DNA of 64,000 bases from the IMG/VR virus record IMGVR_UViG_3300030085_002431, positions 1 through 64,000 of that record; one strand, given 5' to 3'. Both the position numbers and the translations under genes were made by a program. Below are positions 30,929 through 51,088 of this stretch, piece after piece (the first letter of the stretch is position 1; each line of letters starts with the position of its first letter). The notes beneath the pieces were generated by a model. It was not told the DNA's origin. It did not search any database and worked only from the letters and a program-made list of their open reading frames with translations.

Positions 30929-31131
30929 TGAAACCAATTAAAGATAATCATGGTCTTTTCCGAGATGAAAAGACCAATGCTGTCATCAATAGCAATTCTA
31001 CAGAATATGATGCATACATTGCAGAAAAAAATAGAATACTCTCTGAAAAAAGAGACATTGACAATATGAAGAAGGACATCGATGAGATTAAAGATGCTCT
31101 TCACATCATCCTTAACAAGCTAAATACATAA
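30928..31131 (+). CDS. small hypothetical protein with C-terminal coiled coil
   Basis: Start overlaps the vrlC stop; 67 aa; helical heptad tail (IDNMKKDIDEIKDALHIIL). Confidence 0.8.
   Translation: MKPIKDNHGLFRDEKTNAVINSNSTEYDAYIAEKNRILSEKRDIDNMKKDIDEIKDALHIILNKLNT
31119..31126 (+). promoter_or_regulatory. T4-type late promoter (GCTAAATA)
   Basis: 20 nt upstream of ATG 31147. Confidence 0.65.
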
Positions 31132-31146
31132 AAAGTACTTTTTGCT

Positions 31147-36011: not shown

Positions 36012-38539
36012 ATAACGAGGAGTTAACACACGAGCAGAAGAAGCAGAAAATTATTGATGCTTATGAAGCAGCTAGGGCAAATGGTGAGCAGGAACCAGAT
36101 GCAAGTCCTACTACTAAAAAGGAATTTATTGTTGGTTGCTATACCGCAGAGGATTGGGTAGAAATTCATGCTCTTTTGACCTCAGAGGATACATCCGAAG
36201 ACAATGTTCCTTCAGAGAGTATTCCATGCTGCAATGAGATATTGCATAGCCCTAAAAGAGGAATATATTCATTAACAGACCCAGAAGCAGAGGCATTGAG
36301 GGATCATCCAAAAGTAGAGTATGTAAATGTTAACGCAGCAAAATATCCTGGAACATTCGCAGTCAATCCACTTGAAGTTACTGAATTAAATCTTACAGAT
36401 GGAAGATTTTATCGTTATGACAATACCGTAAAGCACCAGAAAGCAATTTCTACTAGTGGCATCAGACCAACTAACCCTGGTGTAGACCTTTTAAATAGAG
36501 GAAGTTGGCAGTTACACAGACATACACAGGCTGTAGACCCATGGTTGAGTGCTTCAAGTACAAGTTCAATTATTGAAACTAGGCATCAACAACTTGGTGA
36601 CGGTAGTGATGTTGATATTATTGTGTGTGACCAAGATATGTGGTTTGGTCATATTGAATTTCAAAATAATTTAGAAACAGGTCCAACAAGATATAGAGGA
36701 GGAAATGTACTTCCAGGAAATGGAACGTGTGATATTCTCGATTTAATCCTTGATGCTCCGTATTACCTAGACCCTGATTTTTTTGATGCAGATCCAGCAC
36801 AGAGATTGATGACTCGTTGGGATGGGACAATAGTTCCAACAGAGACAGCAGCACATAATTGGTGGGAAAATAATAGTACTACATATCGTTCTTCAAAGTT
36901 TGTAAGTCAAAGCCAGGGTGGAAGTGCTAGTGGAGTTTTTGACTTTGGTCAAATAATGATTGAATCTGGTTACACCAGAGCAAATAGTAATGGTAGTAAT
37001 ACTTCATATCATACTGGATCTGGATACCATGGTACTCCATGTGCTTCTCAGTCATATGGTAGGCAATATGGATGGGCATTTAATGCTAATAAGTGGTTTT
37101 TGAATCTTTATGGTTCAAATTCCCATAGTTTTGAGGTTGGTTTCGATTTACAGAAAGTTTTCCATAATTGCAAACCAATTAATCCTACGTATGGAACAAA
37201 AGATCCAACAATTTCTAGTAATAGTTGGAGTAATAGATTCACACCAGCATCTAGTGGATATTATTGGCATAGACCTGCAACAATTGATGGTACTACTAAT
37301 GGAGTTTCATATTCCAGTAAACCAGCATTTATGAATAATTATAATTCTAATACTAGAGCAGCACCTTATGCTCCAAACTCCGTTCTTACTGCTGGAGAAG
37401 AGATGATTGATGCTGGAGTAATTTTTGTATGTGCTGCAGGTAACAGACATCAATTGAATGTTCCTAGTGACGATGTAGATTTCAACAACTATGATGGATC
37501 ATCATCCAATGTTTCATTAGAAAATTCCAAATCAACTTCTTATTATGGTAATGGAATGTATGGGTTAGAGTATTATAGAACTCATAATAGAATTGGATTC
37601 CCAGGACAAATTGGAGTTCAAACTTCCACAACACCATGGACTTACAGAACAATTAATGTTGGTGCTCTAGATGATTTACATAGTAATAACAAAGAAAGAT
37701 TAGTATATTATACCAATCGAGGTCCAGGAGTAGATGTATATGCTACGTCTGACTATTCTCTTGCTGCTAGTGATGACAATTATCCAGGAACAATAACAAA
37801 TCGTTATGATAAGTATTACACCATCGATGGCACTCAATCTGTAGAATCTAGAGATTGTTTGTTTAATGGTACAAGTTCTGCATGTCCAATCTTTGTTGGT
37901 CTTTTAGCAACTAAAGTTCAGTATAATAGAAGTTGGACTTATGCTGATTGTAAAACTTGGATTAATTCAATTACTCCACAGTCAACCAGTGATTTTAATT
38001 ACATAGCACGTCCAGACACACCAACTCATTCCAACTGGTCAGTACAGAATTCTGCTTGGGAACCTTCCAATACACTAATTGTGGCATGGGATAAACCAAC
38101 AGGAAACGAACCTGGGGTTACTTTTGAGCAAGACTTCCTGAATACACCAACACCAAATCTCCCCTCAGTTATTGAAGGAACTACCCTTAGTGTCAGTATT
38201 ACCACTGATGCTTCAGATGGAACTTATTATTACTCATGTGAAAAGGATGATTTTGGGTCAAATATTGAAGGAAATGATTTCCAAAGTCTATCATTGACTG
38301 GAAGTTTCACCATTTCATCTGGAACTGGAACAGTAAATATTCCCATCAAATCTGGAATTCTTAGCAATAACCAAACAGAATCTTTTAGATTCCGAATTCG
38401 CACAGGTTCTACTACTGGACCAGTTGTTGCGACATCTCAAGATTTCCAAATTACAGATGCACCAGAACCAAATCCATTTGTATTTGCAACAGGTGAAGGT
38501 TTGAGTTTCAGCGGAAGCATCAGTATTCGTTTTGAGTAA
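36008..38539 (+). CDS. subtilisin-family (S8) protease with prodomain and C-terminal beta-sandwich
   Basis: Complete triad: VDIIVCDQD (D at 36629), YHGTPCAS (H at 37028), AAGN, FNGTSSACP (S at 37874); prodomain ending LRDHPKVEYV. Confidence 0.88.
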   Translation: MNNEELTHEQKKQKIIDAYEAARANGEQEPDASPTTKKEFIVGCYTAEDWVEIHALLTSEDTSEDNVPSESIPCCNEILHSPKRGIYSLTDPEAEALRDHPKVEYVNVNAAKYPGTFAVNPLEVTELNLTDGRFYRYDNTVKHQKAISTSGIRPTNPGVDLLNRGSWQLHRHTQAVDPWLSASSTSSIIETRHQQLGDGSDVDIIVCDQDMWFGHIEFQNNLETGPTRYRGGNVLPGNGTCDILDLILDAPYYLDPDFFDADPAQRLMTRWDGTIVPTETAAHNWWENNSTTYRSSKFVSQSQGGSASGVFDFGQIMIESGYTRANSNGSNTSYHTGSGYHGTPCASQSYGRQYGWAFNANKWFLNLYGSNSHSFEVGFDLQKVFHNCKPINPTYGTKDPTISSNSWSNRFTPASSGYYWHRPATIDGTTNGVSYSSKPAFMNNYNSNTRAAPYAPNSVLTAGEEMIDAGVIFVCAAGNRHQLNVPSDDVDFNNYDGSSSNVSLENSKSTSYYGNGMYGLEYYRTHNRIGFPGQIGVQTSTTPWTYRTINVGALDDLHSNNKERLVYYTNRGPGVDVYATSDYSLAASDDNYPGTITNRYDKYYTIDGTQSVESRDCLFNGTSSACPIFVGLLATKVQYNRSWTYADCKTWINSITPQSTSDFNYIARPDTPTHSNWSVQNSAWEPSNTLIVAWDKPTGNEPGVTFEQDFLNTPTPNLPSVIEGTTLSVSITTDASDGTYYYSCEKDDFGSNIEGNDFQSLSLTGSFTISSGTGTVNIPIKSGILSNNQTESFRFRIRTGSTTGPVVATSQDFQITDAPEPNPFVFATGEGLSFSGSISIRFE

Positions 38540-38546
38540 ATAAATA
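38539..38546 (+). promoter_or_regulatory. T4-type late promoter (AATAAATA)
   Basis: 17 nt upstream of ATG 38564. Confidence 0.7.
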
Positions 38547-38563
38547 GTTAAAAAGTATCTCTG

Positions 38564-39913
38564 ATGGCTAATAAAGGATTCGGTATAAGAGAACTAACAC
38601 TTATTGAAGGTGCTGGAACTCCGAAATTATCAGTACCTCAAAATTTAGATATTGATGCAGTAGTTGTAGGTATCAGCACTGGACTGGTTGTTGGTGGTGC
38701 TGTGACTATTGCTGGACCTCTTGGAGTAGCAACTATAACATCAACGGGTCGAATCACTGCAACAGAAATTAATGCAGAGTATTATTTTACCGAGTCTGCT
38801 GATAATAATTCCGATTATAATATCCCATTCATGGGAGATGCTACTGGTGGTAATAGTTATTCAGCTCTTCAGGTTGACAATAGTGTATTACAATTCAATC
38901 CTGGCACTAATATACTTAAAACCAATAACCTAGAGGCTTTTGGGTATATTGATGCTGGTAATGGATACATAGGTGATGGTTCACAATTAACAGGAATTGT
39001 TACTTCTGTTGTTGCTGGTAGTGACGTTACAGTTTCACAAACAGGTGGAACAGTAACTATTAATTCAACATCTGGTGTTGGATCGGATGCAAGTGTTAAT
39101 ACAACAGGAATTATTACTGCAGCATCTTTTGATTCAACTGGATTTGGTGCTGCAACGATTCGTGTAGCAGTTGGAAATACACTAAACATTGAAGCTCCAA
39201 TTGTTGCTGTTTCTACTGATATGACAGTAGGTGGTTTAGCAACTATACCTAATTTAAGTGTACCAACACTTGCTGATTTGCCAGTAATTGGACCTGGATT
39301 AGGACAAACAACAAGACTTAATGCAAATCAGGTAGCAATTTCAACTAACTGTAGTATTGGTAATGACCTTACCATTGGAGGAAATATAGGTCTAACTGGA
39401 AATATCAATTCAAATGGTGGAACACTGAATATAAATGCCAATGATTTCCGTGTATTTAATAGTGCAGGAACTGTCAAGAAATTTGATGTCACTAATAGTA
39501 GTGGAATTGTTGCAGACGCAGATTTTGATATCAATGGTCAACTAACAGCCAATTCATATAGAACAGCAACTACGGTAGGTGATGGTCAAGATTTGAGTTA
39601 TGGAATAGTTTATAGCATTGCTGCAAATTCTGGTCAATATCGTATATCTGGTCCAGGTGTTGTAAATACTGTTGATGACCCAACATTATACTTACATAGA
39701 GGATTTACATATGTCTTCGTAAACACAGCTGGTGGTAGTCACCCATTCCGCATCCAGTATACAGGAACAAGCACTGGATATGGCAGTACCTATCTAAGTG
39801 GCAACCAAAGTGGCACACAGGTCTTTACAGTGCCCTTTGATGCTCCATCTACTCTTGAATATGAATGTGTATACCATAGCACCATGAAGGGTAGTCTAAT
39901 TATTCCTACTTGA
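38564..39913 (+). CDS. fibre-like protein with C-terminal cupredoxin-like domain
   Basis: GDGSQLTGIVTS and VNTTGIITA fibre motifs; C-terminal DPTLYLHRGFTYVF...SHPFRIQ...LEYECVYHSTMKG. Confidence 0.8.
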   Translation: MANKGFGIRELTLIEGAGTPKLSVPQNLDIDAVVVGISTGLVVGGAVTIAGPLGVATITSTGRITATEINAEYYFTESADNNSDYNIPFMGDATGGNSYSALQVDNSVLQFNPGTNILKTNNLEAFGYIDAGNGYIGDGSQLTGIVTSVVAGSDVTVSQTGGTVTINSTSGVGSDASVNTTGIITAASFDSTGFGAATIRVAVGNTLNIEAPIVAVSTDMTVGGLATIPNLSVPTLADLPVIGPGLGQTTRLNANQVAISTNCSIGNDLTIGGNIGLTGNINSNGGTLNINANDFRVFNSAGTVKKFDVTNSSGIVADADFDINGQLTANSYRTATTVGDGQDLSYGIVYSIAANSGQYRISGPGVVNTVDDPTLYLHRGFTYVFVNTAGGSHPFRIQYTGTSTGYGSTYLSGNQSGTQVFTVPFDAPSTLEYECVYHSTMKGSLIIPT

Positions 39914-39939
39914 CAAGACTATTTGAATACGTTTATAAT
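39910..39939 (+). promoter_or_regulatory. consensus sigma70-type promoter TTGACA-N18-TATAAT
   Basis: TTGACA 39910-39915 and TATAAT 39934-39939, at the start of a 211-nt intergenic region. Confidence 0.65.
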
Positions 39940-39994
39940 GAGTCTGTGGACGGTCAAAGGTGACTTATATCCTTAAAGACCAGATTCTAACTAA

Positions 39995-40002
39995 CCTAAA
40001 TA
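39995..40002 (+). promoter_or_regulatory. T4-type late promoter (CCTAAATA)
   Basis: Just upstream of the structured leader, 122 nt before ATG 40125. Confidence 0.65.
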
Positions 40003-40011
40003 GTCAAATAT

Positions 40012-40124
40012 GGAAGGTTTCTAGTGACTTATAAGGAAATAAAAGTTGCTGAGATTGGACAGAGTGTTGCGAGTATGCTCTGTTTAGAAACCTTTGTACG
40101 CATTAGAGAGAGGATGCGTTAAGT
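40012..40124 (+). promoter_or_regulatory. candidate structured cis-regulatory 5' leader (three-way junction plus RBS hairpin)
   Basis: AAGGTTTCTA 40014-40023 pairs with TAGAAACCTT 40085-40094; ACAGAG 40059-40064 pairs with CTCTGT 40078-40083; ACGCAT 40098-40103 pairs with ATGCGT 40114-40119 around the purine-rich RBS. Confidence 0.6.
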
Positions 40125-43100
40125 ATGGCTCTCTTTCAATACAACCAAAACAGCATAGTTCCGTTTAGTAGTATTGATTATGGATTTATTAGTGAAACAC
40201 ATACAACATCGGAAGACGAAGGAGATTTAGCAGTAGTTGCTCAGACTACTATTGCTCCAGATGATATTGTCTCCACATATAGTGGTAGTCTTAACATCGT
40301 AACTATTGCCAATACTGGCACTGGTGTTGGAGAGTATGGTGGATTTAATGTAGGAAGACATATTAAATTTACTGGAACAGGTACAAGGTCATTTAGTTTT
40401 GCATTTGATACGAGTAATCGTGAAGAGATAACATTCTCAGTTATTCGTGGTAATGATTCAAATGGTGGTGAACTTACTGATAGTGGTGAAGACCTTTTAT
40501 TTGAATATTCAACTAATGGTGGAAGCACTTGGACTGGAACTCAGACTTTAGTTGCATATAATGATACTACATTTGATACTTTAAATGATGTTACTGTAAC
40601 ACTACCTACAGCAGCAAGAGTATCTAATGCACAGTTTAGAATTAGACAAGCAAGTAATAGTGGTTCTAATTATGACCAATGGGGTGTAACTGCGGTTACT
40701 ATTGGTGGTGAGATACTTACTACTGAAGATTATGGATTCTTAACACCTAATAGTGGTCCTGCGAATCCATACGGTAGACTTAAGATTGTTACAGAGTTTG
40801 CAAACGAAAGACTTGCAAGAACAAGTGTCGGTGGATTTGGATTCCTCCTTCATGGAGATACAAGAATTTTCGTCTTGCCGATTCACGTCGGTTCTGGTTA
40901 TCTCCGACCTGTTGGTCGTGTTGTGGACAGAAGGACAGCCAGACAACTTGGATCTGGCTCCTTCTCAGCCTTCATTGGTTCTGCAGAGGTAAGAAGCAAT
41001 GCAGAGGAAAGTAGAGGTCTATTCAGAATTAGTGGCTCTGCCACAGATAAGCATTTAGAAAATTACGTTGGTGTTGGTAAGCTCAAATTCGCACCAACTA
41101 ATCGTCAACAACCAGGATTCCCAGATTCTTCTGCTGAAGTTAAATTCTCACCAGCAACGAGACCTGCACAGGGACTATTCCCAATCAGGGGTGAGGCTAA
41201 TGTTAATGTTCAGTATCATCAGACGGTTGAAGGTATATTACCTATCGTCAGTGGATCTGCACAAGCAGATAGAGTTGCATATGATTATAACGAATCTTCT
41301 GTAGTCAATGTAGAGACCATTGATTATGGTTTAGTTACTGATGTAACTGCTGACCAGAAGATTAGTGATTATGCTAACGTACAAATTAGTACATTAGCAA
41401 ATGAAGTAGTTGCCAACTTTGGTGAGCATCCAAATTCAGAGAATTACGGCAGTATTTCTCTTGATCCAGAGCAGTCTATTAACACTGTTGGATATAATCA
41501 TATTGATTATGGTTCTATTGCCGATGATGAAAATAGATTCCCATTCGGTAAGTTCCAGTTTGAAGATGAGGGTGACCCAAGATTTGAGTCTGCCAGAATT
41601 GGTATTAGAGTTAGACCTGTTACACCTGGTCCAACATTTAGACTTGCTGGTGAAGCAGGTGTCTTTACTCTACCAATTCACTTTGGTGAAGGATTTACCA
41701 GACTTGGTGGTACTGCAACCACAAGAATTAGAGCAGTCTACTATGGTTCTGGTACATTCTCCAAGTTTGGTGGATCTGCAGAATCTACAGGTGTTGCAGA
41801 AAGAAGAACTGTTCTCTTCAATGTTAAGGGTGATGCACACGCAGTTGTTCGTTTCGTATATATTGGTTCTGGTACACTATTCTCAATTGTCAGCAAGTCT
41901 GAGTCTACAGCAATTGTAGAAAAATCTTCTGCACTATTCAAGTTTACTGGTGCTGGTGTCGAGAAGAATACCGAAGCATATTCAGGAAAAGGTTCTCTCT
42001 TTGGATTTGTATCCAGTTCCGAATCGAAAGTTGTTCAGAGCACTTCCTCTGGACTGTTCAAGTTTACTGGTTCTGGTGTCGAGAAGAATACAGAGAACTA
42101 CGTTGGTCAAGGTTCACTATTCGCAGTTGTCAGCAAAACAGAATCCACAGTTGTTCAGAGCACTGCACAGGCACTGTTCAGATTTACTGGTGCAATTACA
42201 AACGAGCATGTCAGATACCATCAGTTTGGTACTGGTTCACTCTTTGGTCTTTCAAGTACTTCTTATGCAGAGAAGGTTGCATACGATTACAACGAAGATT
42301 CGATTGTCAATGTAGAGCATGAAAATTATGGATTTATTACTGATGCGACTGCTGACCAGAAGATTAGTGATTATGCTAATGAGCAGATTAGCACCTATGC
42401 AAATGAGGTAGTCTTTAACTTTGGTCAGCATCCAAATTCTGAAGACTTTGGTCACATCTCTATTGACCCAGAGCAATCTATTCATACTCATGGTTATAAC
42501 CATGTTGATTATGGATTCATTAATACCACTAATAGATTCCCATTTGGTGGATTTACCTTCGACGATGGCAGTGTTACCTCTGCAACTTCCAAGTTCCAGG
42601 TCAGACTACCTGTTCAAGGTCCTGTATTCCAGGTTAAAGGTGCTGCTGATGTTTATGTACTTCCAGTACATATTGGTGGTGGAGTTACCAGACTTGGTGG
42701 AAATGCCAGAATCAGAATCAGAGCAGTCTACTATGGATCTGGTACTGCATTCTCCTTCGTCAGTGGTGCGGAAGTTACTTGTTCTGTTCCACCAACAGAG
42801 GCACCACTTCTCGACTTCAATGGTACTGCAAGAGAGAGATTTGGAAAGGGCAATTACGATGGCACTGGCACATTCTCTGCATTTACTGGTGCTGCAGAAT
42901 CTACTGTTATCAACAGTGCAGCATCGGGTCTCTTCAAGTTTGTCGGTACTGCTACAGAGAAGAATACCGAAAATTATGTTGGAAATGGTTCTCTCTTTGG
43001 ATTTGTTACAAAGACAGAATCTACTGTTATCAACAGTGCAGCATCTGGACTCTTCAAATTCCTTGGTGGAGCAGTCGAGAAGAACACCGAAAATTATGTT

Positions 43101-46022
43101 GGTTCTGGTACTCTATTTGGATTCGACAGTTCTACAGAAGCAACAGAAGTCACCAGCAAAGCAGACGGTCTCTTCAAGATTTCTGGAGCAGCAACAGACA
43201 TACAAGTTGTATTCAGTCATCGTGGTTCTGGTTCACTCTTCGGAATTGTTGGTCATGCCGAGGCAGTCACATTTGATTATAACTGTCATTCCTCAATTGT
43301 TAATATTGGGGCAGATAATTATGGATTCATCACTGAATCTATATCTGACCAGACAATTTCCGATTATGCTAATGAGCAGATTAGCACCTATGCAAATGAG
43401 GTAGTTTCTGACTTTGGTATTGATCAAAGAACTGAGTCCTTTGGTCATATCTCTATTGACCCTGAACAGTCTATCAATACTCATGGTTATAACCATGAAA
43501 ATTATGGACTTATTACTGAACCAGAAGGTGGTAATAAGTTCCCATGTGTCCACATCCATATTGGTGGAGAAAGACTTACAGAATCCAGAGCACGAGGTTA
43601 TGCTGGTTCTGGTACATTCTCTGCATTCATTGGTGCTGCAGAAGTTGTTGCTCAAACCGACGATACCTTTGGACTATTCAAAGTTCATGGTTCTGCTGGT
43701 GTTGTTGCTTCCCTATCCCATGTTGGTTCTGGTGAAATCAATATTGGTGACTCTGGAATTGATAAGTTTGTTAAGGTCCAGTTCTCCCCACCAACCACTG
43801 GTGTTCTATTCAAGTTCTCTGGTGGACTGGATGTCAGTGGTGTCAAGGAGAGACCATCCGACCTCAAGGCAACATTTGTGGAAGTTGGACATGCAAAACT
43901 CCGCATTGCTGGAGATGCATTTACTACCTTCCATCTTGGACATATTGGAAGTGGTCAATTCGATATCAATGGCAATGCTATCGAGAAGCATACCGAAGCA
44001 TACCTTGGTTCTGGTTCTCTCTTCGCATTCACTGGTGGAGCAGAAAGTCTCACTGTCGATCTTCCAGAATTTGCAACTCTATTCAGATTTGCAGGCAACG
44101 GTATCGAGAAGAATACCGAAAATTATGTTGGTCGTGGTGCTCTGTTTGGATTCGTTTCCAAGACAGAATCTACAACTTCTGCGGAACAACCAAAAGTACT
44201 CTTCAATATCGAAGGTGCTTCTGTCAACAAAATCCTATTCCACTATCCTGGTTCTGGTACATTCTCCAAGTTTGGTGGTGCGGCAGAAGCAAGAGCAGTT
44301 GTCAAGAAAGCAGGTGGTCTGTTCACATTCAGTGGCAACGCACCAGAATCTATCACTCCTGCACCAGAAATTGGTTCTGGTTCTCTATTCACATTTGTTG
44401 GAAAGACAGAAGCATTTGCTGCAAGCGACGACTTTGCACCACCACTATTCAAGATTGGTGGAGATGCAATCATTGGATTCTCTCTTGGTATTATTGGTCG
44501 TGGTGGACTCGATGTTCTTCAGAAAGTCACCAAACTCGACGTTGAAGGCAAAAACAGATTTGTCGGTGCTCAAGAAAGAAGAGCAGTCAACAATCCTGCT
44601 TCTGTACTATTCAGCATCGACGGAAACGTCAAAATCTTCTTTGTCTTCCAAGAAGTTGGTGGTGGATTCACCAGAATTGGTGGAGAAGCATTCACCGAAG
44701 TTACACCTAGACATACTGGTCGTGGTAAGACTTCTCTACATGGTGATGTCACCATGTCTGCTTCCCTATCTCATATTGGATCGGGAACAATCTTCGGATT
44801 TATTGGTGGAGCAGAATCTCGTGCAATAGACCTACCACCACAAAAGGGACTACTCAGATTTGCTGGTACTTCATCAGAAGCATTCCAACGTGGACCAGAA
44901 ATTGGTACTGCTTCTCTACAAATCAAGTCTTCCGACGTATTTGTCAGATTCAAACTCAGTCATATTTCAGATGGTTCCAGAATCCATGTCGATGGAGATG
45001 GAGCAGAAGCAAGAGTCAGACTCTACGAAGGTTCTGGTACACTCTTCGGATTCAGTGGTGCAACAGAATCTCGCACAATCGATCTTCCTCCACAGATTCC
45101 AACACTCTTCGAGTTCAGTGGAAACTCTGGAGAAAGAGAAACCAATGCACATCAAGGTACTGGTTCACTCTTCGGATTCGATTCTGCGACAGAAGTCAGA
45201 ACTGTTTCACCAGAACTTTCTGGTCTCTTCAAGGTTCAGGGTACTGGTGCGGAAGCAAAAACCAAGGTATTTACTGGTTCTGGTACATTCGACCTCAACA
45301 CCAAGACCGATGGTCTCGATGTTTCTGGCAAGCAAGTTTATATCAGTGCTCCAGAAAGAACAACTGTCAATCCACCAGAAGAGACTCAAGTATTCTCCTT
45401 CAATGGTGCCGCAGTTGCAAAAGAACTCAGGTCTCACGCAGGAAAGGGTTCACTCTTCGGATTTACAGGAGCAGCAGAATCCAGAGCAGTTGCACCAGAT
45501 TCTACGGGACTCTTCAAAGTTCAGGGTTCTGGAGAAGAATCCAGAAGTAGAATTTACTCTGGAACAGGAAGAGTATTTGGATTTACTGGTGGAGCAGAAG
45601 CAACTGCTGTTACAGAAAACGTACCAGGTTCTCTCTTCAAATTTACTGGTACTGTTACTGTTATATTTGAAAGAGCACCATTTATTGGTTCTGGTACACT
45701 CTTTGGATTCAGTGGGGCAACAGAAACTACAGCAGTTGCACCACCAGTTGCAACACTCTTCGAGTTCAATGGAAGTGGTGCGGAATCCAGAACAAGAACA
45801 TACCAAGGTTCTGGTACACTTGTCGCATTCAAGTCCGCAACTATTTCCAGACGTGTACCATACAATGCTACACAAGGACTTTTCAAACTTGCTGGAGCAC
45901 TCAAAGAATCTTTTGTTCCTTCTGGATACGTTGGTACGACTGGGGTTCAGTTCATCGGAGCATCTGCAGATAGACGAATTGAATTTGAATCACCGAAACC
46001 AACTCAGATATACATCGTTTAA
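40125..46022 (+). CDS. 1965-aa repetitive virion structural protein with an N-terminal reelin-like beta-sandwich
   Basis: Dozens of roughly 40-aa GSGxLFxFxGxxE repeats; three long (Y/F)DYNxxSIVN modules; LFEYSTNGGSTW...QFRIRQ...DQWGV domain. Confidence 0.8.
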   Translation: MALFQYNQNSIVPFSSIDYGFISETHTTSEDEGDLAVVAQTTIAPDDIVSTYSGSLNIVTIANTGTGVGEYGGFNVGRHIKFTGTGTRSFSFAFDTSNREEITFSVIRGNDSNGGELTDSGEDLLFEYSTNGGSTWTGTQTLVAYNDTTFDTLNDVTVTLPTAARVSNAQFRIRQASNSGSNYDQWGVTAVTIGGEILTTEDYGFLTPNSGPANPYGRLKIVTEFANERLARTSVGGFGFLLHGDTRIFVLPIHVGSGYLRPVGRVVDRRTARQLGSGSFSAFIGSAEVRSNAEESRGLFRISGSATDKHLENYVGVGKLKFAPTNRQQPGFPDSSAEVKFSPATRPAQGLFPIRGEANVNVQYHQTVEGILPIVSGSAQADRVAYDYNESSVVNVETIDYGLVTDVTADQKISDYANVQISTLANEVVANFGEHPNSENYGSISLDPEQSINTVGYNHIDYGSIADDENRFPFGKFQFEDEGDPRFESARIGIRVRPVTPGPTFRLAGEAGVFTLPIHFGEGFTRLGGTATTRIRAVYYGSGTFSKFGGSAESTGVAERRTVLFNVKGDAHAVVRFVYIGSGTLFSIVSKSESTAIVEKSSALFKFTGAGVEKNTEAYSGKGSLFGFVSSSESKVVQSTSSGLFKFTGSGVEKNTENYVGQGSLFAVVSKTESTVVQSTAQALFRFTGAITNEHVRYHQFGTGSLFGLSSTSYAEKVAYDYNEDSIVNVEHENYGFITDATADQKISDYANEQISTYANEVVFNFGQHPNSEDFGHISIDPEQSIHTHGYNHVDYGFINTTNRFPFGGFTFDDGSVTSATSKFQVRLPVQGPVFQVKGAADVYVLPVHIGGGVTRLGGNARIRIRAVYYGSGTAFSFVSGAEVTCSVPPTEAPLLDFNGTARERFGKGNYDGTGTFSAFTGAAESTVINSAASGLFKFVGTATEKNTENYVGNGSLFGFVTKTESTVINSAASGLFKFLGGAVEKNTENYVGSGTLFGFDSSTEATEVTSKADGLFKISGAATDIQVVFSHRGSGSLFGIVGHAEAVTFDYNCHSSIVNIGADNYGFITESISDQTISDYANEQISTYANEVVSDFGIDQRTESFGHISIDPEQSINTHGYNHENYGLITEPEGGNKFPCVHIHIGGERLTESRARGYAGSGTFSAFIGAAEVVAQTDDTFGLFKVHGSAGVVASLSHVGSGEINIGDSGIDKFVKVQFSPPTTGVLFKFSGGLDVSGVKERPSDLKATFVEVGHAKLRIAGDAFTTFHLGHIGSGQFDINGNAIEKHTEAYLGSGSLFAFTGGAESLTVDLPEFATLFRFAGNGIEKNTENYVGRGALFGFVSKTESTTSAEQPKVLFNIEGASVNKILFHYPGSGTFSKFGGAAEARAVVKKAGGLFTFSGNAPESITPAPEIGSGSLFTFVGKTEAFAASDDFAPPLFKIGGDAIIGFSLGIIGRGGLDVLQKVTKLDVEGKNRFVGAQERRAVNNPASVLFSIDGNVKIFFVFQEVGGGFTRIGGEAFTEVTPRHTGRGKTSLHGDVTMSASLSHIGSGTIFGFIGGAESRAIDLPPQKGLLRFAGTSSEAFQRGPEIGTASLQIKSSDVFVRFKLSHISDGSRIHVDGDGAEARVRLYEGSGTLFGFSGATESRTIDLPPQIPTLFEFSGNSGERETNAHQGTGSLFGFDSATEVRTVSPELSGLFKVQGTGAEAKTKVFTGSGTFDLNTKTDGLDVSGKQVYISAPERTTVNPPEETQVFSFNGAAVAKELRSHAGKGSLFGFTGAAESRAVAPDSTGLFKVQGSGEESRSRIYSGTGRVFGFTGGAEATAVTENVPGSLFKFTGTVTVIFERAPFIGSGTLFGFSGATETTAVAPPVATLFEFNGSGAESRTRTYQGSGTLVAFKSATISRRVPYNATQGLFKLAGALKESFVPSGYVGTTGVQFIGASADRRIEFESPKPTQIYIV
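41280..46022 (+). repeat. hierarchical coding repeats: ~1-kb modules starting 41280, 42282, 43272 plus ~120-nt units
   Basis: 44 nt identical at 42369-42412 and 43362-43405; 31 nt identical at 42895-42925 and 43015-43045. Confidence 0.85.
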
Positions 46023-50482: not shown

Positions 50483-50803
50483 ATGGCTTCTGGAATTTTA
50501 GGACAATCCGCCCCTTCGGCAACTACTTTGACAACTGTTTATACAGTACCAAGTAGCACTCATTCTGTTGCGAACATTAACGTTCTTAATCGTAGTGCAT
50601 CAGCACCTGTAGATGTGAGAATTGCTTTATCTGCAACTGGAACACCTACATCAGCAGAGTACATCGAATATGATGTTTCTATTCCTGCTAAGGGTGTTAT
50701 GGAAAGAACTGCAATTTCATTGCAAGCAGGAAAGAACATTGTCGTTTATTGCTCTACTGGAGACACTTCTATCAGTGTCTACGGATTAGAGCAATCTGCT
50801 TGA
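50483..50803 (+). CDS. small beta-rich virion/fibre-associated protein
   Basis: TTVYTVP...ANINVLNRS...VRIAL...EYIEYDVSIP; a similar domain occurs twice in the 62717 ORF. Confidence 0.78.
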   Translation: MASGILGQSAPSATTLTTVYTVPSSTHSVANINVLNRSASAPVDVRIALSATGTPTSAEYIEYDVSIPAKGVMERTAISLQAGKNIVVYCSTGDTSISVYGLEQSA

Positions 50804-50815
50804 TAGGAGGGACCA

Positions 50816-51085
50816 ATGGGAAGATTCGTAGGTTTATCCATCAATAAAGGTGGAGGCGGTGGTGGTAGGCCACTTAATGAGGAGTTTACAAGAGCAACGG
50901 GTATCACTACCGACTCTAGTAACAATGTTACAGCAGTTACATTAGGTGATGTTTCCTATACTAATGTTGGTTATAGCACTGTTGGACTAATCACAGGATT
51001 CACTGAAAATGTCGGTGGTGTCACTAAGGTTTATCAACTGACTTATAATAGTGATAACTATGTTACAAATATTACGGAGGTATAA
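50816..51085 (+). CDS. small hypothetical protein (89 aa)
   Basis: GGAGG RBS at 50806; Gly run then Thr/Val beta-strands. Confidence 0.72.
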   Translation: MGRFVGLSINKGGGGGGRPLNEEFTRATGITTDSSNNVTAVTLGDVSYTNVGYSTVGLITGFTENVGGVTKVYQLTYNSDNYVTNITEV

Positions 51086-51088
51086 TTC

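What the first reader, a model, noticed from the sequence alone, without database searches (positions are those of the whole stretch)
40012..40137. Structured ~115-nt leader (three-way junction plus RBS hairpin) ahead of the 1965-aa repeat protein
Seen: a perfect 10-bp closing stem (40014-23/40085-94) encloses an imperfect hairpin GTGACTTAT/ATAAAAGTTGC with an AAGGAA loop (40024-40049) and a hairpin ACAGAGTGT/ATGCTCTGT (40059-40083). A further stem ACGCAT/ATGCGT holds the AGAGAGAGG RBS in its loop, and that RBS can instead pair with CTCTCT at 40129-40134. The fold starts about 10 nt after a late promoter, while most other leaders here are under 55 nt. Inference: a cis-regulatory RNA controlling translation of a very large structural protein, such as an assembly feedback or riboswitch-like element. 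I do not recognise it as a known family.
Basis: partly seen in the sequence, partly recalled or inferred. Interest (0 to 1): 0.65.

Follow-up and report, generated by a model that had tools for sequence, protein, structure and literature searches.

The report
Structured leader RNA before cyanophage baseplate gene
The long untranslated leader in front of a giant baseplate/tail-fibre gene of an uncultured marine cyanophage folds into a three-armed RNA structure, kept by compensating mutations in related phages, followed by a hairpin that buries the ribosome-binding site; this looks like a new phage RNA control element, but what it responds to is unknown.

Summary
The window is the first 64 kb of a 250.6-kb T4-like cyanomyovirus. 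The element lies in a 211-nt spacer between a gp9-like gene and a 1965-aa baseplate/fibre protein.

I recovered 10 distinct homologous leaders (13 distinct spacers) from metagenomes.
- **Same fold:** all 10 fold on their own into the three-way junction plus a hairpin pairing AGAGAGAG (ribosome-binding site) with CUCUCU (codons 2-4).
- **Pairing kept:** 98.8% of pair cells are canonical, and 5 pairs carry double compensatory changes.
- **Strand:** G·U pairs and the energies (-40.3 against -22 kcal/mol) place the structure on the + strand RNA.
- **Rates:** the junction sequence drifts at about the synonymous rate (0.126 against 0.10). The 30 nt around the ribosome-binding site are nearly frozen (0.007).

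There is no Rfam match, the element is single-copy in its genome, and it is absent from more distant homologues of the gene. The spacer also holds an invariant sigma70-type promoter, and the whole cassette recombines as a unit.

The variable junction argues against a metabolite riboswitch. An invariant arm 1 stem and arm 2 loop fit better with a protein contact or a tertiary contact. The 32-codon upstream ORF shows no purifying selection. No expression data were found.

Verdict: a real, new cis-acting leader RNA whose mechanism is only inferred.

The parts
39910..39939 (+). Sigma70-type (early) promoter, TTGACA-N18-TATAAT. The -35 hexamer overlaps the TGA stop of the gp9-like gene.
   Evidence: It matches 12 of 12 consensus positions. 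Both hexamers are invariant in 13 spacer variants while the 18-nt spacer varies.
39940..39951 (+). Invariant block GAGTCTGTGGAC directly after the -10 hexamer, where transcription would start.
   Evidence: It is invariant in all 13 variants. The promoter plus this block recurs at G000:89279-89323(-) and in 8 other viral contigs in different gene contexts.
39952..39995 (+). Hypervariable segment present only in a transcript from the early promoter. It holds a degenerate direct repeat (39960-69) of the 5' arm of hairpin 1.
   Evidence: Mean pairwise divergence is 0.214 against 0.10 at four-fold sites. The repeat could pair with the 3' arm of hairpin 1 in 88% of cells, but with no double changes.
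39996..40002 (+). T4-type late promoter motif CTAAATA. The inferred late start is near 40008.
   Evidence: The motif is present in all variants. Five of the 7 + strand copies in the window sit just upstream of genes. NATAAATA is the published cyanomyovirus late promoter (PMC2984593). The start site is inferred, not measured.
40013..40095 (+). Three-way junction. The closing stem is 40013-21/40087-95. Arm 1 is 40022-51 (core 40024-49). The variable junction strand is about 40052-59. Arm 2 is 40060-82, with an invariant loop UGCGAGU at 40068-74.
   Evidence: It appears in the MFE of the window and of all 9 other homologues and in the RNAalifold consensus. Double compensatory changes occur at 2 closing-stem pairs and 3 arm 2 pairs.
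40096..40125 (+). Near-invariant linker plus ribosome-binding site. It contains AGAGAGAGG (40105-13), the weak 'open' hairpin 40098-103/40114-119, and a TAA at 40120-22 that ends the upstream ORF 2 nt before the ATG.
   Evidence: Divergence is 0.007 against 0.10 at four-fold sites among 9 lineages. The open hairpin is worth -4.9 kcal/mol. Its pairs are counted.
40105..40136 (+). 'Closed' hairpin: AGAGAGAG pairs with CUCUCUUU (codons 2-4). An inner 4-bp helix covers the A and U of the start codon.
   Evidence: It is worth -12.3 kcal/mol at 37 C and -17.5 at 20 C. The ribosome-binding site and the A and U of the start codon are at least 92% paired in the ensemble. It is predicted in 10 of 10 homologues; in L025 the inner helix is rebuilt from different sequence.
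40024..40122 (+). Upstream ORF of 32 codons with a GTG start. It is probably not a conserved peptide.
   Evidence: It is listed and is open in 10 of 10 homologues. It carries 6 synonymous and 23 non-synonymous changes, spread 9/9/11 over codon positions, and chance alone keeps it open with P about 0.22.
40125..46022 (+). Gene served by the leader: a 1965-aa virion baseplate/fibre-type protein.
   Evidence: It matches Pfam Reelin_subrepeat-B at residues 75-194 and phrog_11522. Relatives are annotated 'baseplate wedge subunit'. It is followed by Mtd_N and CBM_5_12 tail-fibre genes.
38564..39913 (+). Upstream gp9-like baseplate wedge/tail-fibre connector gene. It is not part of the cassette.
   Evidence: It matches phrog_677 and gp9 by tblastn. 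Relatives carry different genes at this position.

Best explanation
The element is the cis-acting 5' leader of the mRNA for a giant baseplate/fibre protein of an uncultured T4-like cyanophage.

Transcription from the late promoter (CTAAATA, 39996-40002) would start near 40008. After about 5 free nucleotides the RNA folds into an 83-nt three-way junction (40013-95). A frozen 9-nt linker follows. Then comes a hairpin that pairs the ribosome-binding site with codons 2-4 and covers the start codon.

I propose two linked jobs:
1. The junction caps the 5' end of a message that is at least 6 kb long. It presents a fixed surface (the invariant arm 1 stem and arm 2 loop) for a tertiary contact or a protein.
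2. The initiation region is closed by default. Translation of this low-copy, costly protein is therefore throttled. It may be opened only briefly during transcription, through the weaker hairpin that shows the ribosome-binding site in its loop, or by a bound factor.

Shown here: the fold, its conservation by compensating changes, its strand, its linkage to the gene, and the predicted burial of the ribosome-binding site. Inferred: the transcript start, any stabilising effect, any switching, and any trans-acting factor.
For: - **Same fold everywhere:** each of the 10 distinct homologous leaders folds alone into the same architecture, and RNAalifold gives the same consensus.
- **Pairing kept:** 98.8% of pair cells are canonical, against 38-54% when partners are slid. 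Five pairs have changes on both sides (1 of 500 shuffles reach this). No shuffle in 500 reaches the observed covariation score.
- **Drift with pairing preserved:** the junction drifts at 0.126, about the four-fold-site rate of 0.10, yet stays paired. The linker plus ribosome-binding site diverges only 0.007.
- **Strand:** many G·U pairs, and -40.3 against -22 kcal/mol for the two strands.
- **Closed state dominates:** -12.3 against -4.9 kcal/mol for closed and open hairpins. The ribosome-binding site and the A and U of the start codon are at least 92% paired.
- **Linkage:** the leader always sits before this gene, whatever gene lies upstream, and is single-copy in its genome.
- **Precedent:** structures that bury T4 initiation regions are established for genes e, soc, 49 and I-TevI (PMC3014915).
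Against: - No RNA data exist. No listed metatranscriptome holds the stretch, so the start site and even inclusion of the junction in the mRNA are inferred from a promoter motif.
- Stability is not exceptional within this genome (rank 134 of 3194).
- Diversity is low. By my count from the pair tables there are about 5-6 independent compensatory events, 3 of them in the single divergent sequence L025.
- Both arms of the closed hairpin are invariant, so that hairpin has no covariation. One arm is coding sequence.
- More distant homologues of the gene manage with 14-78-nt spacers and no junction. The element is therefore not essential to this gene family.
Confidence: 0.6

Rival explanations
1. Protein-binding translational operator. 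The junction would be the binding site of a phage or host protein: the encoded structural protein itself when unassembled, the phage RegA homologue, or another RNA-binding protein. That protein would lock or release the adjacent initiation region.
For: The arm 1 stem and the arm 2 loop UGCGAGU are invariant in all 10 leaders, while the other stems covary freely. This fits sequence-specific recognition. The 30 nt around the ribosome-binding site are frozen. The genome encodes a RegA-family repressor at 96845-97207. T4 gp32, gp43 and RegA operators are precedents (PMC3014915).
Against: Nothing links any protein to this RNA. The invariance could equally reflect an RNA-RNA tertiary contact, or constraint from two alternative folds. 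I did not find any example of a tailed-phage baseplate protein repressing its own translation.
Confidence: 0.25
2. Small-molecule riboswitch. The three-way junction would be an aptamer and the open/closed ribosome-binding-site hairpins its expression platform.
For: A three-way junction lies directly upstream of two mutually exclusive hairpins at the ribosome-binding site. The fold is supported by covariation.
Against: The junction strand between the arms varies in sequence and length (8-15 nt) and there is no strand between the closing stem and arm 1. The arm 1 loop also varies, for example AAGGAA against AATAAA. No Rfam riboswitch matches even at E up to 10. The distribution is narrow and single-gene, ahead of a structural protein with no metabolic link.
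Confidence: 0.08
3. Leader-peptide (upstream ORF) coupling. Ribosomes would translate the 32-codon ORF 40024-40122, melt the closed hairpin, terminate 2 nt before the main ATG and re-initiate.
For: The ORF is open in 10 of 10 leaders, including L025, where the lengths differ by a net 12 nt yet the frame holds and the stop overlaps the ATG as ATGA. The other two frames carry 2-5 stops. The ORF reads through AGAGAGAGG, so translating it would open the closed hairpin.
Against: There are 6 synonymous and 23 non-synonymous changes, as expected at random, spread evenly over codon positions. Chance alone keeps the ORF open in the 9 close lineages with P about 0.22. Its GTG and its GGAAGG ribosome-binding site lie inside the junction stems. 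In L035 and L037 the compensatory change weakens that site to GAAAGA while keeping the base pair. The conserved 3' part shows no synonymous change either, so the constraint is on nucleotides, not the peptide.
Confidence: 0.1
4. The spacer matters mainly as DNA. It would be a portable promoter cassette and recombination site of the PeSL type, with the RNA fold a passenger.
For: The homology block starts exactly at TTGACA and ends about 625 nt into the gene. Upstream genes differ between relatives. Sub-segments have conflicting divergences: L036 against L035 is 0.03 in the coding sequence but 0.18 in the junction. The promoter block recurs elsewhere in the genome and in other contigs. PeSL shuffling is documented in T4-type phages (PMC2839356, PMC4122927).
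Against: This does not explain compensatory, strand-specific (G·U) base-pair conservation. No G/C stem-loop terminator is present. The two readings are compatible: a cassette can carry a functional leader.
Confidence: 0.1
5. An independent small RNA, transcribed from the early or late promoter and ending after the junction, acting in trans.
For: It has its own promoters and a compact, stable fold.
Against: No terminator follows. The scan finds none, and the closing stem is followed by only UUUGU, with no U run at all in L025. Spacing to the ribosome-binding site is fixed and the element is strictly linked to one gene. It is single-copy.
Confidence: 0.05

Closest known systems
T4 initiation-region hairpins of genes e, soc, 49 and I-TevI (reviewed in PMC3014915)
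   Same: The ribosome-binding site and start codon of a T4-type phage gene are buried in a local helix. Early and late promoters sit in tandem upstream.
   Different: In T4 the late promoter lies inside the 5' arm, so late transcripts escape the hairpin. Here both arms lie about 100 nt downstream of the late promoter, so late mRNA carries the closed hairpin. A covarying three-way junction precedes it.
PeSL mobile regulatory cassettes of T4-type phages (PMC2839356, PMC4122927)
   Same: A near-perfect sigma70 promoter in a conserved intergenic block. It is repeated in the genome, ends in a ribosome-binding site plus ATG, and marks recombination boundaries.
   Different: PeSLs are roughly 100-bp conserved intergenic blocks with a G/C-run stem-loop that terminates transcription, and they flank small orphan genes. 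This spacer is 211 nt, has no terminator-like hairpin, adds a late promoter and a three-way junction, and serves a 5.9-kb structural gene.
Three-way-junction riboswitches (purine class and similar)
   Same: A closing stem with two hairpin arms, placed directly upstream of a switchable ribosome-binding-site hairpin.
   Different: The junction strands and one loop are variable here. No Rfam model matches, and there is no metabolic gene context.
5'-terminal stabiliser stem-loops (ompA-type leaders; from my own knowledge of Emory, Bouvet and Belasco 1992)
   Same: A stable structure lies within about 5 nt of the inferred 5' end of a long mRNA.
   Different: A simple hairpin is enough for that role. 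Here a specific multi-arm fold with invariant parts is conserved, and the 5' end has not been measured.
Cyanophage-associated RNA motifs in Rfam (PhotoRC-II, manA, wcaG; Weinberg 2010, PMC2864571)
   Same: Candidate structured RNAs in intergenic regions of marine cyanophages.
   Different: None matches this region at gathering threshold over the whole window, or at E up to 10 over 39700-40400.

Membership tests
Any Rfam 15 family | A covariance-model score at or above the family's gathering threshold. | tested here: not met
   There were no matches over the 64 kb at gathering threshold. At E up to 10 over 39700-40400 there were only 4 chance-level hits, none a riboswitch, ribozyme or phage motif.
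Three-way-junction riboswitch (purine-like) | Conserved junction nucleotides that form the ligand pocket. | tested here: not met
   The strand between the arms varies in sequence and length, and there is no strand between the closing stem and arm 1.
Three-way-junction riboswitch (purine-like) | A conserved loop-loop contact between the two arms. | tested here: not met
   The arm 1 loop varies (AAGGAA, AAAGGA, AATAAA, AAGGTA). Only the arm 2 loop is invariant.
Three-way-junction riboswitch (purine-like) | Ligand-dependent switching of an expression platform. | not testable with these tools
   Two exclusive hairpins exist, at -4.9 and -12.3 kcal/mol.
T4 gene e / soc / I-TevI type of ribosome-binding-site burial | Ribosome-binding site and/or AUG held in a helix. 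| tested here: met
   The ribosome-binding site and the A and U of the start codon are at least 92% paired in the predicted ensemble, and the hairpin is predicted in 10 of 10 homologues. This is a prediction only.
T4 gene e / soc / I-TevI type of ribosome-binding-site burial | The late promoter lies within the 5' arm, so late transcripts lack the inhibitory helix. | tested here: not met
   CTAAATA at 39996-40002 lies 103 nt upstream of the 5' arm (40105-12).
PeSL cassette | A strong sigma70-like promoter in a conserved intergenic block. | tested here: met
   12 of 12 consensus positions match, and the hexamers are invariant in 13 variants.
PeSL cassette | A G/C-rich stem-loop acting as terminator. 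| tested here: not met
   There are no terminator-like sites in 38400-41000.
PeSL cassette | Many copies per genome, at boundaries of shuffled genes. | tested here: inconclusive
   Only 2 exact copies of the promoter block occur in the 250-kb genome. The block does mark the 5' edge of the shared module.
Hammerhead ribozyme (also a three-way junction) | Conserved core CUGANGA and GAAA in the junction. | tested here: not met
   The window has CUGAGAU and relatives have CUAAGAA or CUAAUAA, so the core is not conserved. There is no Rfam hit.
Leader-peptide regulatory ORF | An upstream ORF kept open, ending at or near the main start. | tested here: met
   It is open in 10 of 10 leaders. The stop lies 2 nt before the ATG, or overlaps it as ATGA in L025.
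Leader-peptide regulatory ORF | Purifying selection on the peptide, or an accessible start. | tested here: not met
   There are 6 synonymous and 23 non-synonymous changes, equal to the random expectation. The start and its ribosome-binding site lie inside the junction stems.
5'-terminal mRNA stabiliser | A structure within a few nt of the real 5' end that lengthens mRNA half-life. | not testable with these tools
   The 5' end is inferred from the promoter position only, and no RNA reads were found.

The most novel reading that the evidence does not exclude
The junction plus the two-state ribosome-binding-site hairpins form a true RNA switch of a new class. It would sense a phage or host factor (a protein, or less likely a small molecule) and so time or dose the translation of a fast-evolving baseplate/fibre protein. 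It would move between phages together with that protein's N-terminal module as one portable unit of promoter, switch and domain.
Probability: 0.15. Interest if true: 0.75.

Novelty: new variant of a known kind. Interest (0 to 1): 0.47.

Why it matters
Post-transcriptional control in marine cyanophages is almost unexplored. I know of no covariation-supported leader RNA described for a structural gene of a T4-like cyanophage, and none turned up in Rfam or in my paper searches.

If the element works as proposed, it would show how these phages set the dose of very large, low-copy baseplate/fibre proteins. These proteins are likely to matter for host range.

It would also show that regulatory RNA is exchanged between phages together with a protein module. 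The element gives a compact, testable RNA of about 130 nt, with natural compensatory variants already in hand.

Tried and rejected
- **Rfam:** no family matched, either at gathering threshold or with permissive E-values. No tRNA or tmRNA was found.
- **Cultured phages:** blastn of the region against 50,697 phage records matched only the gp9 coding part, not the leader.
- **Upstream gene as bait:** the gp9-like protein found nothing in viral contigs.
- **Exact-pattern scans:** these gave mostly known loci or chance hits. L006, L007, L026 and two Streptococcus contigs are rejected as coincidences.
- **More distant homologues of the gene** (P0014, P0015, P0017; S-IOM18, ACG-2014b, S-SCSM1): spacers are only 5-78 nt, and the covariance model hits nothing in the loci I searched (S-IOM18, ACG-2014b, S-SCSM1, P0014, P0015, P0017 and others).
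- **Paralogous copies:** the covariance model finds only the element itself in its own genome.
- **Expression:** no listed RNA run holds the stretch. Laying three metatranscriptomes gave one unrelated 35-nt fragment. This is no evidence of silence.
- **Early-transcript alternative fold:** the decoy repeat at 39960-69 can pair with the 3' arm of arm 1, but only through one-sided changes against an invariant partner. The segment around it is hypervariable. Not supported.
- **T4 lysozyme-type escape by the late promoter:** rejected on geometry.
- **Hammerhead core:** rejected, because the junction sequence is not conserved.
- **Loop-to-linker contact:** a 4-bp complementarity between the arm 2 loop (UGCG) and the linker (CGCA) is lost in L025 and is expected by chance. 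Not pursued.
- **Energy as evidence:** the genome-wide scan shows the fold is not an outlier.
Full report
**1. Setting**

The window is the first 64 kb of a 250,613-bp IMG/VR virus record. Its genes are those of a T4-like cyanomyovirus baseplate and tail-fibre region:
- a gp9-like connector at 38564-39913 (phrog_677);
- a 1965-aa protein at 40125-46022, with Reelin_subrepeat-B at residues 75-194 and phrog_11522; its relatives are annotated 'baseplate wedge subunit';
- an Mtd_N tail protein and a 1176-aa CBM_5_12 tail fibre downstream.

The nearest cultured phages, P-SSM2 and P-SSM5, are only about 67% identical in a neighbouring segment. The finding lies in the 211-nt spacer 39914-40124. Other apparent long spacers in the window in fact hold small ORFs.

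**2. The observation**

RNAfold of 40005-40140 gives the three-way junction. The closing stem is 40013-21/40087-95, arm 1 is 40022-51 and arm 2 is 40056-86. After it comes a hairpin that pairs AGAGAGAG (40105-12) with CUCUCUUU (40129-36). The MFE is -40.3 kcal/mol, z = -3.57, and 0 of 200 shuffles fold as well.

The reverse strand folds to only -22 kcal/mol.

CTAAATA, the cyanomyovirus form of the T4 late promoter (NATAAATA; PMC2984593), ends 10 nt before the stem. Elsewhere in the window the + strand copies that precede genes sit 27-49 nt before their ATGs; here the distance is 129 nt.

One caution applies. In a composition-corrected scan of 3194 overlapping windows, this one ranks only 134th. 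Energy alone would not single it out.

**3. Homologues**

Cultured phage genomes do not contain the leader. I collected homologues from several sources:
- IMG/VR contigs;
- one metagenome scan seeded with the protein's N-terminus;
- the word search of the protein collection, followed by contig look-ups;
- one scan of bacterial and archaeal genome assemblies (genome contigs), which found one phage contig apparently mis-binned in a Flavobacteriaceae MAG.

This gave 13 distinct spacers and 10 distinct leaders: window, L024, L003, L051, L049, L039, L036, L035, L037 and the most divergent, L025.

All homologues whose N-terminal 210 residues are at least 76% identical carry a spacer of about 211-220 nt; L025, whose contig matches only residues 1-37, carries the longest of these. 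Relatives at 36-45% identity have spacers of 14-78 nt. Classical cyanophages place gp9 and the wedge gene 5-8 nt apart. The covariance model finds nothing in the loci of these that I searched.

**4. Comparative evidence for the fold**

- **Independent folding:** each of the 10 leaders, folded alone, gives the same architecture.
- **Consensus:** RNAalifold returns the junction plus the closed ribosome-binding-site hairpin, 40 pairs in all.
- **Pair counts on that structure:**
  - 98.8% of 400 pair cells are canonical, against 38-54% when partners are slid by 1-3 columns.
  - Five pairs carry changes on both sides, against 1.8 expected; 1 of 500 shuffles reach this.
  - No shuffle in 500 reaches the observed covariation score.
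- **Where the double changes lie:** in the closing stem, G-C becomes A-U at 40017/40091 in L035 and L037, and U-A becomes A-U in L025. In arm 2, 40063/40079 alternates between A-U, G-C and G·U, and two further pairs change.
- **What does not vary:** the arm 1 stem changes only between G·U and A-U, and the arm 2 loop UGCGAGU is invariant. The arm 1 loop and the junction strand between the arms vary freely.

By my count there are about 5-6 independent compensatory events, and three of them are in L025. The support is real but modest.

Substitution rates point the same way:

| Segment | Window coordinates | Mean pairwise divergence |
|---|---|---|
| Four-fold synonymous sites, first 180 codons | from 40125 | 0.10 |
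| Three-way junction | 40012-40095 | 0.126 |
| Linker, ribosome-binding site and start | 40096-40125 | 0.007 |
| Early-transcript-only segment | 39952-39995 | 0.214 |

The junction sequence therefore drifts at about the neutral rate while its pairing is kept. The initiation region is under strong constraint at the nucleotide level. The segment present only in early transcripts is unconstrained.

The many G·U pairs, together with the strand asymmetry in energy, place the selected structure on the + strand RNA rather than on DNA or the antisense strand.

**5. The initiation region**

Two exclusive hairpins are possible.

40098-103/40114-119, with the ribosome-binding site shown in its loop. It is worth -4.9 kcal/mol.
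- **'Closed' hairpin:** 40105-12/40129-36 plus an inner helix over the A and U of the start codon. It is worth -12.3 kcal/mol at 37 C and -17.5 at 20 C.

In the ensemble the ribosome-binding site and the A and U of the start codon are at least 92% paired.

The closed hairpin is predicted in all 10 leaders. In L025 its inner helix is rebuilt from different sequence. Its outer arms never vary, so covariation cannot speak for it.

The open hairpin is invariant in eight of the ten leaders, takes a C-A mismatch in L036 and is half broken in L025. Constraint from two competing folds would explain the frozen sequence. So would recognition by a factor.

**6. Other contents of the spacer**

*An early promoter.* A perfect sigma70-type promoter, TTGACA-N18-TATAAT, lies at 39910-39939 and overlaps the gp9 stop.
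- Its hexamers and the next 12 nt (GAGTCTGTGGAC) are invariant in all 13 spacers, while the 18-nt spacer varies.
- The same promoter block recurs once more in the genome, at 89279-89323 on the minus strand, and in eight other viral contigs in unrelated contexts.
- Tandem early and late promoters are the proposed 'middle-mode' design in RB49, S-PM2 and Syn9 (PMC2984593).

*A mosaic cassette.* Against L003, the block of 86-100% identity runs from exactly 39900 to about 40750, flanked by 30-70% identity.
- Across relatives the upstream gene differs. It encodes proteins of 153, 241, 274, 449, 532, 536 and more than 1000 aa.
- Sub-segments give conflicting distances: L036 against L035 is 0.03 in the coding sequence but 0.18 in the junction.
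- The promoters, the leader and the N-terminal domain therefore recombine as a module. This recalls PeSL cassettes (PMC2839356, PMC4122927), but there is no terminator stem-loop.

*An upstream ORF.* A 32-codon ORF (GTG at 40024, TAA at 40120-22) is open in 10 of 10 leaders.
- It shows 6 synonymous and 23 non-synonymous changes, spread evenly over codon positions.
- Chance alone would keep it open in the nine close lineages with P about 0.22.
- Its start and its ribosome-binding site lie inside the junction stems.

**7. Mechanism**

Most likely this is a cis-acting leader. The junction sits about 5 nt from the inferred late 5' end, and the initiation region behind it is closed by default.

I favour a combined role: protection or organisation of the 5' end, plus throttled and possibly factor-dependent translation of a costly, low-copy protein.

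The invariant arm 1 stem and arm 2 loop suggest a tertiary contact or a protein contact. From memory only, the loop can be read as a GCGA tetraloop closed by U·G, and arm 1 contains a CU:AG step of the kind that receives such loops. This is a lead, not a test.

The genome encodes a RegA-family translational repressor, but nothing links it to this RNA.

A metabolite riboswitch is unlikely, because the junction strand is variable. The T4 lysozyme-type escape does not apply, because the late promoter lies upstream of both arms of the closed hairpin.

**8. Limits**

- No transcript data were found.
- The start sites are inferred from promoter motifs.
- The alignment is shallow.
- Function is untested.

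Noticed in passing
window 39910-39951; G000:C1:89279-89323(-); L027-L034: A conserved early-promoter block (TTGACA-N18-TATAAT plus GAGTCTGTGGAC) recurs in at least three gene contexts across cyanophage contigs. At the second site in this genome it fires antisense into the 3' end of a convergent gene. In L027 and L030 an ORF of about 57 codons starts at the GTG inside the conserved block, which could be a leaderless mRNA.
   Followed up: partly
window 38564-39913 (C-terminal third, about 39500-39913): The C-terminal domain of the gp9-like baseplate connector matches DNA annotated 'PetE' (plastocyanin) in Synechococcus phage S-SCSM2R. It ends in a Cys...His...Met pattern (YECVYHSTMKG) that recalls a cupredoxin copper site. 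Pfam gives no hit.
   Followed up: partly
window 40125-40750: In the first 180 codons of the 1965-aa protein, amino-acid divergence between lineages (0.146) exceeds four-fold synonymous divergence (0.10). The high-identity block with L003 stops abruptly near 40750. This suggests diversifying selection or domain shuffling in a likely host-interaction module.
   Followed up: partly
L040:1128-1200; L042:1123-1200: More distant homologues of the gene carry, in place of the junction, a 73-78-nt spacer with a G-run/C-run hairpin followed by T's. This looks like a terminator, and it sits directly before the ribosome-binding site.
   Followed up: no
L056 (NZAX01000054.1, 7969-nt contig of a Flavobacteriaceae MAG): This contig carries the complete cyanophage spacer and gene start, so it is probably a phage contig mis-binned into a bacterial MAG. 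Its spacer combines the L049-type upstream half with the L039-type junction, which is a natural recombinant.
   Followed up: partly
window 39960-39969 and 40024-40033: There is a direct repeat GTGACTTATA. The upstream copy lies in the hypervariable segment found only in early transcripts. It could compete for the 3' arm of arm 1 (88% of cells pairable, no double changes).
   Followed up: yes
window 30929-31135 and 50817-51086: Two apparent long spacers each hold an unlisted small ORF, the first of 68 codons and the second roughly 90 by my reading. The window therefore has few truly non-coding stretches as long as 39914-40124.
   Followed up: partly
window 41641-41776, 44661-44796, 45481-45616, 50661-50796: These are the strongest composition-corrected folding windows in the 64 kb (residual z about -3.4 to -3.55). 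Three of them lie inside the 1965-aa gene. They were not examined further.
   Followed up: no
G000:C1:96845-97207: The phage encodes a full-length RegA-family translational repressor (PF01818, 148 bits).
   Followed up: no
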